Below, piece by piece: positions 33,819 through 51,527 of a stretch of DNA of 64,000 nucleotides; position 1 is the stretch's first letter; each line of letters begins with the position of its first letter. Below the pieces are notes generated by a model, which was not told the DNA's origin, ran no database searches, and saw nothing but the letters and a program-made list of their open reading frames with translations. A program made the translations under genes and the position numbers. The stretch is from Aplysia californica (taxonomy: Eukaryota). The stretch covers positions 318,691 through 382,690 of the forward strand of contig NW_004797289.1 of NCBI RefSeq assembly GCF_000002075.1. The letters run 5' to 3'.

Positions 33819-33987
33819 TTGACTTACTAGTGGTGTCCTTTAACCAGACCACAAAGAATCTGTTAAACACAAATACAAAACAGGTGATTTGTTCTTAATA
33901 TTACTTTTCCTCTGTTTATATAATTTAGAAAAAATAGGTACAAGTTATCAGTAACTGAATAAATTGGGTAAAACATGACATGGGCTG

Positions 33988-36193
33988 CACGGCGGGTTTG
34001 GAGCGCCCATTTAGTTTCGGCTGGCGCGAGGCAAGCAAGCCCGCGCTTCCCCAGGTCACGGGGTCATTTACCTGCGCCACCGGGGATTTCCCTTATCAGC
34101 CAAACACCGGCAGCGCTCTTGTATTTTTTGCAAAGTTTACCAACACAGTGAGCCAAAGCTAATGTAAGATGAACATTTTAATTAAGACAACGTAAATATT
34201 CAACATATTAAGGAAGAAATGAAGAAAATCGGAAGCCCATGGTACATTACACTTAAAAGCTGTGAAGTTCTCAAAAAGGGGACTTAATTTGATAAATGTG
34301 TCATGGGTAATCAATTATAAACTTCAATTTAAATGTGATTGCCCCCAACGAATTCAATCAAATTTGCACACAGGACTGAGAACATAATGGAAATTTGTAC
34401 TCACAAAGGGGCATATACAAGAAGCTTCTGGATCCGTAATTATTCAGGTTTGAAGTAGATTTTTTGCAATACTCTTGCTTTGCGACCTTGATCTTTCATA
34501 GCGATATCCACGGTACATGTAACTACAGTACAGATCTTTCCTTGCCGATACACTTATGAAAACACAACCTAAACACAAAATACAAAAAGAACACAATATT
34601 GCGGGACTGGAGGACGCTGTAAGCTTTCGTCTTTTGATGGGTGGTGCACACGACAGAGTAGCTTAAGGTGGGTTTGGACGTGTTGTGACTGCATGATTGT
34701 TTTGACGTGTTTTTGTTTGTCTTTTATTGCTGCTACTCGTTTTTCCAGCTTGGCCACGGTTGCATGAATGAGCTCAGCCCCTTGCTCACCATGGAAGGCC
34801 ATTCCAAATCCATATTTTTGTATCCAAGGGATGCAGTGTTTCTCAAGGATGTGTTGTGATGTAGCACATGTTTTACGGCACTATCCACTCAAGACCTTTT
34901 ATTTGCCAAATATGTTTCTGTATAAAGACATATATCGTGTGATGCATGACTGAATATGTGGCATTCTCTCTATAGTGATTGGCTTTCCATGTGCTATTAT
35001 TGTGTGGATATCTTTGAAGGTGACTTTTACTTGAACAAATTTCTCTCTCAGAACAATTAATGCAGTGTCTATTATGCTTTGATTTCGTGTACATGCAACT
35101 GTTCTTTTTGTTAAAAATGATGTTAGCTGTCTGTACACATGGGCTGTGATTTATTTTTGGCAGTGGTTTCCTATAAATGAACGGCTGTGGTAGGCCTGTG
35201 GTGTGACGTGTTGTTTGAGGATGTTATCAAATTCAGAGCAGGCAGGACTTGACCTTGGAATAAGCTCCTCAAACTCTTAACTCTGACAGCTGATCATGTA
35301 CACTAGAACCCTCCCTCTCAAATCTCTCTGCTTCTCGTGGATTATCTGACAAAACCTGACAGCCCTGTAACAATTGAATGTCCCCCTCGTTTTTTTCAGC
35401 CCTCTTTCATTTTTTGCCGTAGATATGCACATTTTGTCCTATTCCAGGCCTGCAATTCTCCATAGATTGATGGACCAGCTGTACATCTATATCATGTGCA
35501 GCCTCCTCAAGAAGGCCATGATGTTTGAGCACAATGCCCACCATATGATCATGTTGTGTGGCATTCCATGACAAAAATATTGTTAAAAATGACAACGAAA
35601 ATCAGATGTAGCAGAGGCAAGAAAACTAAAAACAGTAAGGATGAATGTTCAGAGTGGTGGGTTGGGGTTTTTTTTTAATCACCGAAAATCATAGAATAAC
35701 TTAGTGCACTTGAAACTTGCACATGTAAATGAAAATTGTCACCACAGTTGATACATAAATTTCTGTTTAAATCGTTGGGGGCCGGATTGAAATATTTAAA
35801 TTCAAACTGAAAAAGTTCTGAGCATTGAAGATGCCAGTTTGAAAATCACAGACTTACTTAAATCCCTTGTAAAACTGATATAATCGGACTTGCAAGAAAA
35901 CAAGTTATATCGGCTTACAGGTCAAACATAGCACGTTACAATGAAATCTCAATCGGCCTTGTAGCATTTATAGTTTCAGAGTTAGGAGGCTTTCAATTCG
36001 CACTAAAACGCCATATTTACTACTGCCCCGGCACAGGAGGAGTGGCGCTGCGGTCACCCCAATTAACCCCTCTGACAAGTGATTTATGATTACTGGGCTG
36101 TCGGGCGGGGCGGGCAGGGTGGTGAGGATGGTCGGGGAGGAACCGGGGAAGAAAAACTAAGTGAGCGGTCTGGATGGTATTTTATCCGCTGTG
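33988..36193 (-). mobile_element. Chapaev/Transib-type (CMC, RAG1-related) DNA transposon relic, 2206 bp
   Basis: Termini CACGGCGG.. and ..CCGCTGTG; 4-bp TSD GCTG (33984-33987, 36194-36197); internal transposase remnants. Confidence 0.8.
34600..35570 (-). pseudogene. Degenerate Chapaev/Transib/RAG1-like transposase, C-terminal part
   Basis: Minus-strand fragments HMVGIVLKHHGLLEEAAHDID; PQAYHSRSFIGNHCQK*; QHILEKHCIPWIQKYGFGMAFHGEQGAELIH (H-x4-H followed by catalytic-E region); stops and frameshifts. Confidence 0.75.
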
Positions 36194-36234
36194 GCTGACT
36201 AAGGGTCAGGAAACAAAAAAAATATTTACTGTAC

Positions 36235-36442
36235 CTGTAGGTGCCATCGCCTGGACCTATCACGTCACAGCAGCGAATGCCGTCGGGCTTCTCCCCAGGC
36301 CGCCTCACATGCTGCCAGTCCAGGGGTTTGCTGCAGAAGTGGACTGGCCAGTCCACAGGACGTACTCGCATGCGCATGTGTACGCAAGACAGGGGGACGG
36401 GCAGGGCGCTGCCCACAGGGACCTTCATGCACTGGTAGTGGC
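36235..36442 (-). CDS. VPS13D: VPS13D exon (HYQCMKVPVGSALPVPL..GDGTYR)
   Basis: ctccag| ... |gtaca, phase 1 to 2. Confidence 0.9.
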
Positions 36443-36469
36443 CTGGAGGGGGACATATGGAGTAGGTAT

Positions 36470-38129
36470 TTTTTGTTGTTGTTGTTTTACAGCACTTGCA
36501 ACATAATTAGGTCATACAACTGCCGAAGATAAGAGGTGTTACAAGGGAGTAACAAACACAAAAACAACCACACANNNNNNNNNNNNNNNNNNNNNNNNNN
36601 NNNNNNNNNNNNNNNNNNNNNNNNNNNNNNNNNNNNNNNNNNNNNNNNNNNNNNNNNNNNNNNNNNNNNNNNNNNNNNNNNNNNNNNNNNNNNNNNNNNN
36701 NNNNNNNNNNNNNNNNNNNNNNNNNNNNNNNNNNNNNNNNNNNNNNNNNNNNNNNNNNNNNNNNNNNNNNNGGAGGGTGGGATGTTATAAGATAACATGA
36801 TATGTTTACTGTTTGAATAAAGAGAGGCACATTAACACAACTATTGTCATTTAAGGGAAGGAAAATTACCCCCCAAAAAGACAGACAAGGGAGAGAAATA
36901 AAAGGTGTTGGATTTACGAGGGAAATCCTTCAACTACTCATGTTAAAAATGTGAAATAAAAAGAGCCATACTATTCCGTTAAATAAACTGCATGACGTAA
37001 AAAAAACTTCAGGGTGGGGAAATCGGAGCAATATGAAATTTGTACTAATCCAAATCTGACAAGGGCAGCCTTGTCTAAAAGTCAAGGTGTTGGGTTGGGA
37101 GTTTGATTCCAAACTGCACAAAGCTGAACAGTAAATTTTTACCAGAAGTTCTTTACCCTATCTTCCTTAATTTATGTCACCCCATATGGGTTATGTAAAT
37201 CAGTATGACAGCGGCAAAAAATCCAGTGCCACAGTTGCTAGCACTTAACAGGCTGCTACACTATGTATCCTAAAAAAGCATGAATCCAAAAGAATTATTA
37301 CAAAGTTGCATGAGCATTTGGGTGGAAAGGATACAATATAATCATGACTCCAATCGTATTTAAAAAAAACAAAAATACACCTTTTAACTGTTATGCTTAA
37401 ACGAAAACTTTGAGAAGCAGTAGCTCAAACAAAACCTGTCCACTGACAACAGACATCAAAAGCATCAAGAGACAAGACACAGATGGGAGGGTGAAGGCTG
37501 CCAGTCATGTTACGGTAACAGTTTTACAGCACTTTCAACACAATTAGATAATAGAGTGCCGAAGATTAGGGGTGTTACGAGAGAGCAACCAACATAAAAA
37601 AAGAAGGAGAGATAAGGACGATAGATGTTTGACAGGACAGAAGGAGCAAACCACACCAGAGCACCCGTCAACCACTCTCTCTCTTTGCCAGTCAAACACT
37701 GACGGGTAACACAAACTGACACAAGGCAGCAAGCACAACATAGGCAACACACATAACTTCGTCTCACCCGTCTCATCAGTGGACTCCAATTTGAGCTCCA
37801 GTGGACTGTCCAGCCTGTTGTGGATGACCAGAGCTGACCGGATGATGATGAGTTTGCGGGCACCGCCCTCTTGCTGGACCTCCACCACAATCCGTGCCGG
37901 GGACACGTGGGGCTGAGGACAGCACACAGTAATAAGGGAAAGTGTTAGCAGTGGTGAGCAGCACAAGGCACAGTTAGGTACAAGCAAATGTGTTTGTAAG
38001 TTTAGTTTTAGTTGTAGTAAGAGTTTTACGGCATTTGCAACACAATAAGGCCATATAAGTGCTGAAAAGAGGTGTTACAAAGAGGGTAACAAAGACAAAA
38101 AAGAAAGAGGGGCAATAAGGATGTTAGAT
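36470..38129 (-). mobile_element. Three retroposon B copies (36470-36573, 37513-37676, 37999-38129)
   Basis: consensus match; span also contains the exon at 37768-37912. Confidence 0.8.
37768..37912 (-). CDS. VPS13D: VPS13D exon (PHVSPARIVVEVQQEGGARKLIIIRSALVIHNRL..)
   Basis: cctcag| ... |gtgag, phase 0 to 1. Confidence 0.93.
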
Positions 38130-48550: not shown

Positions 48551-49048
48551 CTAGTTAACAAAACAAAACAGCACATCAGCGTGGTCCGATGTGGTACATG
48601 GCATGGTTATGTATATAATATGATATGGTGCTGCATGGCATCAAATGGCATCATATGATATGCCTGCATCTAACACAGTAATGTTGACTCAGTGCTGGGA
48701 CCAAATTTAATTTGTTTTCAACAGGACTGAATCAGGTGCATGTACACATTAAAGACACACAGAGCAACCAAAGTTCAAGAACGCCCCCATCAGGACTTAA
48801 ACAGCACAATAGTTCAGCTACACATTGCATGACCTATCAGCAAGCCCAAGAACATTTGCAAAAAAAGAAAGATCAGATAAGACCCAGAGCTAATTCATCA
48901 ACAAGGGAAATTTGTTTTCCAGTTGCTGCCAATGACGATAGAGAAACAATGAAGTCAAATGAGATAAACATTCAAGCCTAAAAATGTATACAAGGAATAC
49001 TTATCACGACTATTCAGTTCTACTATCCTTGCTGAGCACTTAGTTTAA

Positions 49049-51121
49049 CCCGTCCGCTGACCTCCGGGGGTCATAAATCCCACTTGACAGTCAGGCCGCG
49101 CATCTTTTCCTGGGTGATAGCGCTGTTAGCCGATTTCGGTTAGAAAGTCTGTAATTTTCACTTGATTTAGACCCCTGTAAATGTCCTCTCTTATCTGTCA
49201 CTATGGGTGTGTGAGGTATCAAATGAAAGCTCGGATTCTCCCCAATAACCCGCATCCTTTAGTTTGGTTCTAGTTCTAATCGAGTACACACACTGCCTCT
49301 GTACTTAACCCTACCTTGTTGTGCACGTATTTCTCGGAATCCTCCAAAATCAGCGGTTTTTTTCCATTCGTGAACTTCAGATTGTAACCAGTTTTTTATC
49401 TGTTGTATTAAGAGTCAGTAAGGAGGTTATTTGTGAAAAATTGTTTTGATTGGTTGGAAACCTTTAGCAGGATGGCGAGTTTTGTTACTTCACCCCGTAA
49501 TATTTTCCCGGCCACAGCACTGCCCGTGTGGTATTCACCCCGTGGTCCCGCTTTCACTTTCTGGGATTCTGTGTCGACACGTGTTACGAGAGTCTGCTAC
49601 CAGAGTGAAAATGGAACACACGCGGGAACTACACCTTGAGTGTTTAAAAAATTGTGTAGAACGTGCGGGGCCAAGTCAAAAGGTTAAGAAGGCAAACTAT
49701 GAGCAAATATTTTTGTGTAAATTTTAAGAATAACGTACTCGTTCTCTATCATGTGAACATGGAGTGGGATAGTGCAGACACACATCCTGTACACTGTGCA
49801 ACAAATGTGTAGGCCTACAGCGCATATACACCTTAAAAATTTGAGAAGCAACCCTAGCTACTGCACAAAAACGTATTGAAGAAAATTCACACCTAGGGAC
49901 ACCTTTCGATCAAAATAAAACAGTAGATGCTTGCCCTGTGTGTTCCCTTTGCACACTTCAAAACTGTATTAGAAAAGTACATCAAACACCGTCTTGCTCA
50001 AAAGACCCACCAGAGCCTCCATCTGTTGAAACACCGACCCATGTAATTGTAGCAGACAAACAATCACATGAAAGTACTCAACAGACATCCATAGTAGATC
50101 ACTAGAAATATCACCAGTGAACTCCCAACACAGAGATCTAACCCTTGAGACACCAGCCGCGACTTCAACACCCAAACGTAAACAGAAAGAGTTCAAAGAC
50201 AGTTTGAAGACACATCACTAGAGCATGCACTTCAGAGACCTATTACACAACTATTGTCTCATTTAGAAGAAACACCCGCTACACAAATGATACGCAGAAA
50301 ACGTTACTCCTGGGCAGAGAAAAGGAAGGAACAGTTGATATGGAATTGGCCTAGATCTAGGTTTAATGAGCGAGGAGGATGACGAACTTGTTCATCTCAG
50401 CTTCGCAAAACGGGAGAAGATGACAGTGGGAATTAAGGGAAAAGGGAAGCAGTTGAAATCTGTTACTGAAGGGAAAGAAGAGGAAGACAACTAGCCTTTG
50501 AACTCAAAGACACTTTTGCATTTCTTGTTATAAGTATTCATATAAAATTTGTGTTTGTGAAAGTGAAAGCAGCTCTAGCTGTGAAAAGACAAAGCGGATA
50601 CTCTTGTTTCATGAATTGGATAGCAGTGAACCTTCTACAAGTTAACTATTTCTGCTTGAACTGTGAGGAGACAATGAAAAAATCTCTCGTTTCATGAACT
50701 GGACAGTGGTAAATCTTCTTCAATTTCTCCATTTCTCAACCAATCGAACCAAAAGTAAGTGTTTCTGAAAGCTCATCATGTCACTGTTGTATACCACTGA
50801 TTGTTTCATAGATCTGAGGTTCACATTTTAAAATATCGTAATTTTAAAAAGTAGACTCACGAAAAAATTTCTCTCAAAGTTGCCCTCATTTGCGCCGTGT
50901 TGTAAAGGGTGCCCAGTTATGAAAATCAATAAAAAGTTATTTGCTGTTGAGTCCAAGAATGCCTCTATCTTTTGATAGTATTTTGACTTTGATTTGTCTG
51001 TGGGCAAAGCCACAATGACAATGTGAAACTGTATAAAAATTGTTAAGTCACAACAGTTCACTCGCTGAGCAAAGGTCAAAGTGACCTCCCTGACCACCCG
51101 GGCGCAGCAAGGATGACTGGG
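49049..51121. mobile_element. Probable non-autonomous piggyBac-like element (~2.07 kb)
   Basis: TTAA-CCC left end, GGG-TCAA right end, GGTCA-rich subterminal motifs; TIR match is poor. Confidence 0.5.
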
Positions 51122-51527
51122 TCAATTACTCAGGTAACTAAGTGCTCCGCTCAGGAACAGCCGTGTTATAATATTATCCTGACTAATTTGAAACTGTTTT
51201 CTCCATTAGAATGCATTTCTTTCCAATGTGTGTACATGTCAAAAGCTTATGTGTGCTCAGTGAGTGTTAGGATCTATACAAATATAATAGTCGACTGGGG
51301 TCTGTGGTGTGGCAGTCAGACTCTATATATGACAATTTACCAAGTTGCATTCGGGAACAAAAAGAAAGTTAACAAACACATCTAATATGAGGTTAAGCAG
51401 AAAACAAATGTTTGGAACAATTACTGTTCTTCTAGTGGGGAAAAAAACGGAAATGACTCGGGGGGGGGGGGAATGTCAAAATATCCTTAATACATAAGAC
51501 AAAAAGGACAAACTAATAAATGCATAC

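What the first reader, a model, noticed from the sequence alone, without database searches (positions are those of the whole stretch)
33988..36193. RAG1-related (Chapaev/Transib-type) transposon with RSS-like asymmetric bipartite ends
Seen: left end CACGGCG-GGTTTG-GAGCGCCCATTTAGTTT; right end (reverse complement) CACAGCG-GATAAAATACCATCCA-GACCGCTCACTTAGTTT. The terminal heptamers match 6/7, and the right one is 6/7 to the RSS heptamer CACAGTG. A second 17-bp block matches 14/17 but starts at position 14 on one end and 24 on the other, an offset of exactly 10 bp or about one helical turn. A 4-bp TSD (GCTG) flanks the element, and it contains transposase remnants (YHSRSFIGNHC; HILEKH..GEQGAELIH). 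Established: Chapaev elements have CAC ends and 4-bp TSDs; CMC/Transib transposases share an H-x3/4-H motif before the catalytic E and are related to RAG1; V(D)J RSSs differ by about one turn (12/23). Inference: this family may use a short/long end-pairing rule analogous to 12/23 without evident RAG2. This single copy is decayed and internally deleted.
Basis: partly seen in the sequence, partly recalled or inferred. Interest (0 to 1): 0.8.

Follow-up and report, generated by a model that had tools for sequence, protein, structure and literature searches.

The report
Chapaev transposon with unequal RSS-like ends
This is a gutted copy of a known cut-and-paste jumping gene (Chapaev group) whose intact relatives encode an enzyme built like RAG1. 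Its two ends carry the same inner signal one DNA turn deeper at one end than at the other, as in the 12/23 signals that RAG1 reads.

Summary
Window 33988-36193 is one of at least 30 full-length copies of a 2.2-kb non-autonomous transposon family. All 29 copies whose ends I read have 4-bp target-site duplications.

The 10-bp offset is not a private indel. In 11 lineages, TTAGTT starts 34-36 bp from the terminus at the end upstream of the transposase gene and 24-25 bp at the downstream end. The mean offset is 10.2 bp (sd 0.7). Seven lineages come from this genome and four from other assemblies. Their transposases are only 33-54% identical to the reference one, and their spacers cannot be aligned.

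Intact relatives encode a single 937-aa protein and no RAG2-like gene. [quoted passage not shown] Its modelled core matches RAG1 (Z 26), BbRAGL (23) and HzTransib (22).

The element is therefore a Chapaev (CMC) transposon, a known kind. I found no paper describing the conserved one-turn asymmetry in Chapaev, though it is known for some Transib and RAG-like transposons. A long/short pairing rule is plausible but untested.

This scan has already recorded the same conclusion on other pieces of this genome.

The parts
33984..33987 (.). Left copy of the 4-bp target-site duplication, GCTG
   Evidence: All 29 family copies examined have matching 4-bp flanks.
33988..33994 (+). Terminal heptamer CACGGCG of the short end, which lies downstream of the transposase remnants. 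The main subfamily has CACAGCG.
   Evidence: CAC-G-C at positions 1-6 is the conserved core across 22 ends.
33995..34000 (+).
34001..34017 (+). Inner block GAGCGCCCATTTAGTTT. The conserved TTAGTT starts at 34011, position 24 from the terminus.
   Evidence: TTAGT scores 2.0 bits at all five positions in 22 ends, and the sixth base T is present in 21 of 22.
34054..34066 (+). Two subterminal GGTCA repeats (34054-34058 and 34062-34066)
   Evidence: Read. GGTCA/TGACC is about 9-fold enriched at 41-260 bp from the ends and occurs in 21 of 22 ends.
34572..35544 (-). Frameshifted remnants of the C-terminal third of the transposase. They include GNHC, H-x4-H (HILEKH) and the catalytic-E motif GEQGAE. 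The N-terminal two thirds are deleted.
   Evidence: translations; tblastn matches to aa 640-919 of the intact 937-aa L031 transposase at 31-42% identity; an ORF in L034 carries the same motifs (YHSRSFIGNHC, HILEKHC...GEQGGELIH), and one search gives 67% identity between the C-terminal remnant and that locus.
36154..36170 (-). Inner block of the long end, GACCGCTCACTTAGTTT as reverse complement. TTAGTT starts at position 34 from the terminus.
36171..36186 (-). Long spacer, 16 bp
36187..36193 (-). Terminal heptamer CACAGCG of the long end, which lies upstream of the transposase remnants
36194..36197 (.). Right copy of the 4-bp target-site duplication, GCTG

Best explanation
Window 33988-36193 is an internally deleted, non-autonomous Chapaev (CMC superfamily) DNA transposon. 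It moved by cut-and-paste and created a 4-bp duplication. It must have been mobilised in trans by a full-length Chapaev transposase.

That enzyme is a single protein with four parts:
- a RAG1-type N-terminal zinc finger (Chapa domain);
- a disordered linker;
- a segment collinear with the RAG1 NBD, DDBD and pre-RNase-H region;
- a RAG1/Transib-type catalytic core. The core has D-D-E, a C-x2-C and an H-x4-H zinc module.

Each transposon end is bipartite. It has a terminal CAC(A/G)G(C/T)G plus a few more shared bases, and an inner block ending in TTAGTT. The inner block sits about one helical turn further in at the end upstream of the gene (position 34-36) than at the downstream end (24-25).

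Most likely mechanism (inferred, not shown): the catalytic core engages the heptamers. A dimeric NBD-like module reads the two TTAGTT blocks. The one-turn offset produces an asymmetric synapse that favours one long and one short end, as the RAG1 NBD dimer does with 12/23 RSSs, but without RAG2.
For: Family and boundaries:
- At least 30 copies match to both ends, and 29 of 29 have 4-bp TSDs.

Conserved asymmetry:
- 11 lineages with TSD-verified ends all have the long end 5' of the gene. Nine TSDs are perfect and two match 3/4.
- Long position 34.6 (sd 0.9), short position 24.5 (sd 0.5), offset 10.2 (sd 0.7).
- These transposases are 33-54% identical to the L031 enzyme.
- Genome-wide, CACGGCTGTT..TTAGTT gives 189 hits against 13 in the control. 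Of the 100 hits listed, about 95 have a canonical length (29/30 or 39/41 bp, placing TTAGT at 24/25 or 34/36) and the five exceptions are single sequences.
- All 53 paired ends I tallied by eye from the two listings are short plus long.

Protein:
- D480, C570 and C573 are invariant. D551, H859, H864 and E881 are nearly invariant.
- A profile of the N-terminus hits the mouse RAG1 NZD structure 21WB at E 2.4e-6.
- One lineage (L049) passes Pfam cut-offs for RAG1_imp_bd and for RING.
- The AF2 core model has pLDDT 95. All Foldseek hits with E below 0.001 (49) are RAG1, BbRAGL or HzTransib.
- VIA Z scores: 26.0 to RAG1 residues 555-1008, 23.2 to BbRAGL, 22.4 to HzTransib, then 12.1 to P element transposase.
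- Upstream segment: model residues 48-265 align collinearly with RAG1 392-669.
- Single ORF and no RAG2-like gene.
Against: - The pairing rule is untested. Every derivative inherits one long and one short end from its parent, so 53 of 53 mixed pairs is not an independent test.
- The NBD equivalence rests on collinear alignments with Z of only 7.2-7.7 and high rmsd. RAG1 chains without the NBD score the same.
- No sequence-level match to the RAG1 core or NBD was found.
- The inner block (TTAGTT) has no sequence similarity to the A-rich RSS nonamer.
- Ends could not be resolved in the most distant relatives tried, including Hydra. How deep the trait goes in Chapaev is therefore unknown.
Confidence: 0.75

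Rival explanations
1. The two geometries are conserved because the ends have different jobs, not because a mixed pair is required. The upstream end would also carry promoter or host-factor sites, or would set the order of cleavage. Synapsis would tolerate any pair because the second DNA-binding module sits on a flexible linker. Comparable cases, from my memory, are the P element and the Mu and Tn7 ends.
For: - The long end is always the one upstream of the gene.
- In one subgroup the long spacers share an A-rich stretch and a GAAA motif, which suggests an extra site rather than a pure spacer.
- P element transposase is the next-best structural relative after the RAG1 group, at Z 12.1. From memory, the P element also has unequal spacing between its terminal repeat and its transposase-binding site.
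Against: - The offset stays within 9-11 bp, about one turn, in every lineage. This fits a same-face geometric constraint better than an arbitrary inserted site.
- The extra-site motifs are absent from the other subgroup (L041, L042, L047), which still keeps the offset.
Confidence: 0.3
2. The offset is a frozen accident: one ancestral 10-bp indel inherited by all sampled lineages and functionally neutral.
For: All sampled lineages are related. Most come from gastropod-like genomes, so the trait could have a single origin.
Against: - Spacer sequences have diverged beyond alignment, yet each length class has an sd below 1 bp.
- A control distance in the same ends varies from 16 to 123 bp.
- Off-length variants in the genome are single sequences, whereas canonical lengths are multi-copy.
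- Together these show purifying selection on both lengths.
Confidence: 0.05
3. The apparent bipartite ends of the window copy are a chance inverted repeat, and the element is not a transposon.
For: Within the window alone, the 17-nt inverted repeat is no better than many others nearby.
Against: At least 30 copies share exact boundaries, and 29 of 29 have TSDs.
Confidence: 0.01

Closest known systems
Chapaev transposons (CMC superfamily), including N-RAG-TP of the sea slug Aplysia californica
   Same: - CAC termini and a 4-bp TSD.
- A single transposase with an N-terminal Chapa zinc finger related to the RAG1 N-terminus, with a RING finger in some subgroups, and a distantly RAG1/Transib-like core (PMC4411706; bioRxiv 10.64898/2026.01.24.700457; PMC8355894).
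- All of these features were found here.
   Different: Nothing defining differs. What appears to be new is the description of a conserved long/short end geometry. I found no paper linking Chapaev with asymmetric ends or heptamers. The original Repbase Reports were not readable here.
Transib transposons with 12/23-like TIRs, and HzTransib
   Same: - RAG1-like core fold (Z 22.4).
- CAC heptamer.
- Some members have 5' and 3' TIRs whose spacers differ by about 11 bp (PMC8355894, citing Kapitonov and Jurka 2005).
- No RAG2.
   Different: - Transib makes 5-bp TSDs; these elements make 4-bp TSDs.
- Transib lacks the N-terminal zinc finger domain.
- Its second motif is an A-rich nonamer, whereas here it is TTAGTT.
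- Asymmetry occurs in only some Transibs, whereas here it occurs in all 11 resolved lineages.
RAGL-A transposon TIRs of Ptychodera flava (heptamer, TR2, asymmetric spacer, nonamer), and ProtoRAG 27/31 TIRs
   Same: - Bipartite ends in which extra bases next to the heptamer are conserved.
- A 10-bp length asymmetry in PflRAGL-A (bioRxiv 10.1101/2023.08.20.553239).
- ProtoRAG prefers the 5'/3' TIR pair in assays (PMC8289069).
   Different: - Those elements encode RAG2L and make 5-bp TSDs.
- The ProtoRAG offset is 4 bp, not one helical turn.
V(D)J recombination signal sequences (12/23 RSS)
   Same: - Heptamer CACAGTG: identical in lineage L049 and 6/7 in the window copy.
- A second conserved element in two spacer classes about one turn apart.
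- TTAGTT occupies 24-30 and 34-41. By arithmetic from the RSS definition, the nonamers occupy 20-28 and 31-39.
   Different: - There is no nonamer sequence similarity.
- The offset is 10, not 11.
- These are transposon ends with TSDs, not signals in a host locus.
- No RAG2 is involved.

Membership tests
Chapaev (CMC superfamily) | 4-bp target-site duplication | tested here: met
   29 of 29 copies of the window family. Nine of 11 lineages have a perfect TSD and two match 3/4.
Chapaev (CMC superfamily) | Termini beginning 5'-CAC | tested here: met
   All 22 ends
Chapaev (CMC superfamily) | N-terminal Chapa zinc-finger domain related to the RAG1 N-terminus, in autonomous copies | tested here: met
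   A profile of 38 homologues hits the mouse RAG1 NZD structure 21WB at E 2.4e-6 and RAG1 residues 98-336 at E 3.8e-5. The L049 N-terminal ORF scores 29.8 bits on PF12560 against a cut-off of 23.3, and also passes for RING. The window copy itself has lost this part.
Chapaev (CMC superfamily) | DDE core with C-x2-C after the second D and H-x3/4-H before the E | tested here: met
   D480, D551, C570, C573, H859, H864 and E881 are invariant or nearly so. HILEKH...GEQGAE is present in the window remnant.
Chapaev (CMC superfamily) | Phylogenetic placement with reference Chapaev transposases from Repbase | not testable with these tools
   No Repbase sequences were available. Pfam gives only DUF1280.
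Transib | 5-bp target-site duplication | tested here: not met
   The TSD is 4 bp in all copies.
Transib | RAG1-core-like transposase fold | tested here: met
   Z 22.4 to HzTransib and Z 26.0 to RAG1
RAG-like (RAGL / ProtoRAG) transposon | A RAG2-like gene next to the RAG1-like gene, inside the TIRs | tested here: not met
   Each element carries one transposase gene. The elements are 3.9-5.2 kb (L049 is 8.9 kb). In the intact copies the next ORF is 71-127 aa (89 aa in L031).
12/23-type bipartite recombination signals | CAC heptamer plus a second conserved element | tested here: met
   CAC-G-C and TTAGTT carry the information; the spacer carries little.
12/23-type bipartite recombination signals | Two spacer classes about one helical turn apart, one at each end | tested here: met
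   Offset 10.2 (sd 0.7) in 11 lineages. Spacing is bimodal genome-wide.
12/23-type bipartite recombination signals | A-rich nonamer (ACAAAAACC-like) | tested here: not met
   The inner block ends in TTAGTT.
12/23-type bipartite recombination signals | Functional requirement for a mixed (short plus long) pair | not testable with these tools
   All 53 natural pairs tallied are mixed, but the ends are inherited together, so this is not a test.
RAG1-like domain architecture | Nonamer-binding-domain equivalent upstream of the core | tested here: inconclusive
   Model residues 48-112 (protein aa about 303-367, three helices) align collinearly with RAG1 392-460. Z is only 7.2-7.7, rmsd is high, and NBD-less chains score the same.

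The most novel reading that the evidence does not exclude
A one-helical-turn difference between the two ends, read by an NBD-like dimer and favouring a long-plus-short synapse, is ancestral to the whole RAG1, Transib and Chapaev clade and needs no RAG2. Chapaev would then be a single-protein natural model of the 12/23 rule, and the rule would predate the capture of RAG2.
Probability: 0.35. Interest if true: 0.8.

Novelty: new member of a known kind. Interest (0 to 1): 0.6.

Why it matters
The origin of the 12/23 rule is an open point in RAG evolution.
- One review proposes that RSSs came from a Transib with asymmetric TIRs (PMC8355894).
- Another group argues that asymmetric TIRs were already present in the first RAG-like transposon (bioRxiv 10.1101/2023.08.20.553239).
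- Both treat asymmetry as patchy among relatives.

[quoted passage not shown] In every Chapaev lineage whose ends I could resolve, the ends have two fixed geometries one turn apart, at RSS-like distances, and there is no RAG2-like gene.

If the asymmetry is functional, heterologous end pairing is older than RAG2 capture. It could then be studied in a one-protein system. This genome holds intact, nearly identical 937-aa transposase genes with matching ends, so natural material for the experiment exists.

Tried and rejected
- **Pfam on the window's own ORF fragments:** nothing.
- **Single-sequence phmmer of the intact transposase against PDB:** nothing meaningful. Only the profile and the fold searches showed the RAG1 link.
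- **DNA-level similarity between the window family's ends and other families:** none. Ends had to be defined family by family from copy boundaries, TSDs and motifs.
- **Ends not resolved:**
  - L034/L038: the 5' end is missing.
  - L039: the 3' end was not found, and the copy has a 3-bp deletion in its long end.
  - L046.
  - The Hydra locus L048, whose gene has introns.
  - L050-L053, which are short contigs.
- **Proteins that gave no usable DNA:**
  - P0063 and P0110 were not on record.
- **Rfam on 30-40 kb of the window:** no RNA family.
- **ORFs just right of the element (36093-36503):** no Pfam match. I did not establish whether the insertion lies in an intron.
- **Consensus:** I did not build a consensus or repaired transposase. 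All comparisons use natural copies.

Full report
**1. The observation**

- The left end starts at 33988 with CACGGCG, then GGTTTG, then GAGCGCCCATTTAGTTT.
- The reverse complement of the right end, ending at 36193, reads CACAGCG, then a 16-bp spacer, then GACCGCTCACTTAGTTT.
- GCTG flanks both ends.
- The minus strand carries frameshifted pieces of a transposase C-terminus: YHSRSFIGNHC, then HILEKHCIPWIQKYGFGMAFHGEQGAELIH.

Taken alone, the inverted repeat is not remarkable. One search lists 71 inverted pairs in 2.8 kb, and this one ranks seventh.

**2. It is a real, multi-copy transposon with exact boundaries**

A search of the window's own genome (927 Mb, 4332 contigs) with bases 33988-36193 found 48 matches. 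At least 30 of them cover query bases 1-2206 end to end.
- I extracted both ends of 29 copies. All 29 have a perfect 4-bp duplication of different sequence.
- All 29 have TTAGTTT at positions 24-30 of one end and 34-40 of the other.
- The offset is therefore a property of the family, not a private indel.
- The other copies are 97.4% identical to each other at the median. The window copy is about 94.6% identical to them and belongs to an older variant with GGGTTTGG after the heptamer.
- All copies are about 2.2-2.3 kb and keep only the C-terminal third of the transposase. This is a deletion-derivative, non-autonomous family.

**3. The asymmetry is conserved far beyond this family**

A protein search of the genome with the C-terminal remnant found 150 related places at 33-100% identity. 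Some lie in long open frames. I defined element ends from copy-to-copy boundaries, terminal matches and TSDs.

Positions below give the start of TTAGT from the terminal C, upstream end then downstream end:

| Family in this genome | Upstream end | Downstream end |
|---|---|---|
| Window family | 34 | 24 |
| L031 (4.1 kb, intact 937-aa ORF, three copies 98.5-99.3% alike) | 34 | 24 |
| L035 | 34 | 25 |
| L036 | 34 | 24 |
| L040 | 34 | 24 |
| L041 (with deletion derivative L037) | 36 | 25 |
| L042 | 36 | 25 |

Four elements from other assemblies, reached through protein homologues, give the same picture:

| Element from another assembly | Upstream end | Downstream end |
|---|---|---|
| Elysia marginata | 35 | 24 |
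| ENA assembly, L044 | 34 | 24 |
| ENA assembly, L047 | 36 | 25 |
| ENA assembly, L049 (RING-bearing, heptamer exactly CACAGTG) | 34 | 25 |

- In all 11 lineages the long end lies upstream of the transposase gene.
- The long position averages 34.6 (sd 0.9), the short 24.5 (sd 0.5) and the offset 10.2 (sd 0.7).
- These transposases are only 33-54% identical to the L031 enzyme.
- Information content is concentrated in CAC-G-C at positions 1-6 and in TTAGTT. The bases between carry little.
- As a control for indel drift, the distance from TTAGT to the next recurrent motif (GGTCA) ranges from 16 to 123 bp, sd 34.

Genome-wide counts agree.
- The pattern CACGGCTGTT, a gap of 6-32, then TTAGTT has 189 matches against 13 for the reversed control.
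- About 95 of the 100 listed matches have a canonical length, placing TTAGT at 24/25 or 34/36. The five off-length matches are single sequences.
- By my own tally from that listing and the one, all 53 properly paired ends combine one short and one long end. They belong to derivative families of many sizes (1.2 to 6.2 kb).
- Because deletion derivatives inherit both ends, this shows retention, not a requirement.

**4. What the transposase is**

Pfam finds only DUF1280 (E 5e-15), plus sub-threshold hits to zf-AD and RAG1_imp_bd at residues 5-79.

A word search found 114 homologues. The named ones are from gastropods (Plakobranchus, Elysia, Littorina, Nucella) and Hydra. Some carry RING or RAG1_imp_bd domains.

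In an alignment of 38 homologues, D480, C570 and C573 are invariant. D551, H859, H864 and E881 are nearly invariant.

[quoted passage not shown] The N-terminal ORF of L049 passes Pfam's own thresholds for RAG1_imp_bd and for RING. This is the Chapa domain described for Chapaev transposons (PMC4411706; bioRxiv 10.64898/2026.01.24.700457).

*Catalytic core.* An AlphaFold2 model of residues 440-937 has mean pLDDT 95.
- All Foldseek hits with E below 0.001 (49) are RAG1, BbRAGL or HzTransib, with best E 9e-12.
- VIA-align gives Z 26.0 to RAG1 residues 555-1008 (rmsd 3.0 over 384 residues), 23.2 to BbRAGL and 22.4 to HzTransib.
- The next family is P element transposase at 12.1, then Hermes at 7.8.

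*Upstream segment.* A second model (residues 256-520, pLDDT 93) again finds only RAG1 and HzTransib above background.
- Model residues 48-265 align collinearly with RAG1 392-669. That places three helices (protein aa about 303-367) opposite the RAG1 nonamer-binding domain.
- Z is only 7.2-7.7, and NBD-less chains score equally. I call this suggestive only.

*No RAG2.* The elements hold one transposase gene and nothing resembling RAG2.

**5. Classification**

The 4-bp TSDs, CAC termini, Chapa domain and CMC-type DDE core with its zinc module meet every Chapaev feature I could test. The 5-bp TSD of Transib and RAGL elements, and the RAG2L gene of RAGL elements, are not met.

The N-RAG-TP element was described in that species (summarised in PMC8355894). 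I could not verify the organism with a tool.

**6. How it most likely works**

*Shown:* cut-and-paste insertion with a 4-bp duplication; bipartite ends with two conserved geometries; a RAG1-like enzyme.

*Inferred from fold homology:* DDE chemistry at the CAC boundary as in RAG1 and Transib; recognition of TTAGTT by the NBD-like segment; a synapse that accommodates, and probably prefers, one long and one short end, because the two inner sites lie on the same helical face one turn apart.

TTAGTT occupies 24-30 and 34-41. By arithmetic from the RSS definition, this overlaps where the RSS nonamers sit (20-28 and 31-39). The sequence is unrelated to the nonamer.

I put the identity and the conserved asymmetry above 0.9, and the pairing rule at about 0.5.

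*Rivals:*
- The ends are functionally distinct without a pairing requirement (0.3).
- The offset is a neutral frozen indel (0.05, disfavoured by the length constraint).
- The inverted repeat is chance (refuted).

**7. Comparison with the literature**

Asymmetric TIRs are known for several relatives:
- some Transibs (12/23, plus or minus 1 bp);
- a hemichordate RAGL-A element (10-bp asymmetry, heptamer-TR2-spacer-nonamer);
- ProtoRAG (27/31, with an experimentally preferred 5'/3' pair).

Sources: PMC8355894; bioRxiv 10.1101/2023.08.20.553239; PMC8289069.

Full-text searches for Chapaev with 'heptamer' or 'asymmetric' returned nothing on Chapaev ends. The original Repbase Reports are not in the library, so prior description cannot be excluded.

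**8. Earlier notes of this scan**

After my own analysis I looked up the scan's notes. Several first readers and follow-up agents recorded the same kind of element and the same long/short layout on other pieces of this genome. They agree with my result. They are AI notes on the same data, not independent evidence.

**9. Verdict**

The element is an ordinary dead copy of a known transposon kind. The family-wide, lineage-wide one-turn asymmetry of its ends, together with the near-complete RAG1-like architecture of its transposase and the absence of RAG2, is a worthwhile and testable lead on the origin of the 12/23 rule.

Noticed in passing
window 49005-51165: A second, unrelated Chapaev deletion derivative (L042 family, about 87% identical) lies in the same window. 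It has TSD TTAT. Its long end is on the left with TTAGT at position 36, and its short end is on the right with TTAGT at position 25.
   Followed up: yes
window 34054-34066; positions 41-260 from both ends of L031, L035, L036, L040-L044, L047: GGTCA/TGACC is about 9-fold enriched in the subterminal regions: 55 observed against 6 expected from the elements' interiors, in 21 of 22 ends. This may be a third class of binding site, as in CACTA-type subterminal repeats. Part of the enrichment may reflect the higher GC content of the subterminal regions.
   Followed up: partly
L031:2268-6372, L032, L033: Three copies of a 4.1-kb autonomous Chapaev element are 98.5-99.3% identical. L031 and L032 carry intact 937- and 938-aa ORFs (L033 was not checked), and L031 has a perfect TSD. 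The family may be recently or currently active.
   Followed up: partly
G000:C88:1122854-1127187 (locus L026): A copy of the window's family (C88:1123430-1125714) sits between the long and short ends of an L036-like Chapaev element. It looks like a nested insertion.
   Followed up: no
G000:C65:197123-197368 and G000:C45:54648-57069: Two odd arrangements appear. On C65, two short ends of the L041 family point away from each other 186 bp apart. On C45, a short and a long end lie on the same strand 2.4 kb apart. They may be adjacent insertions or rearrangements.
   Followed up: no
L044:1-12182 and L045: In an ENA assembly of unknown organism, the Chapaev element (TSD CGCT) is embedded in a long array of repeats that are about 84-90% identical to each other.
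   Followed up: no
L031 protein aa 291-320: Just upstream of the NBD-like helices there is a conserved KTGGQP, followed by a basic PRK...KRRR stretch (family consensus CKTGGQP...PRKxS). This recalls, by position only, the GRPR motif at the start of the RAG1 NBD.
   Followed up: no
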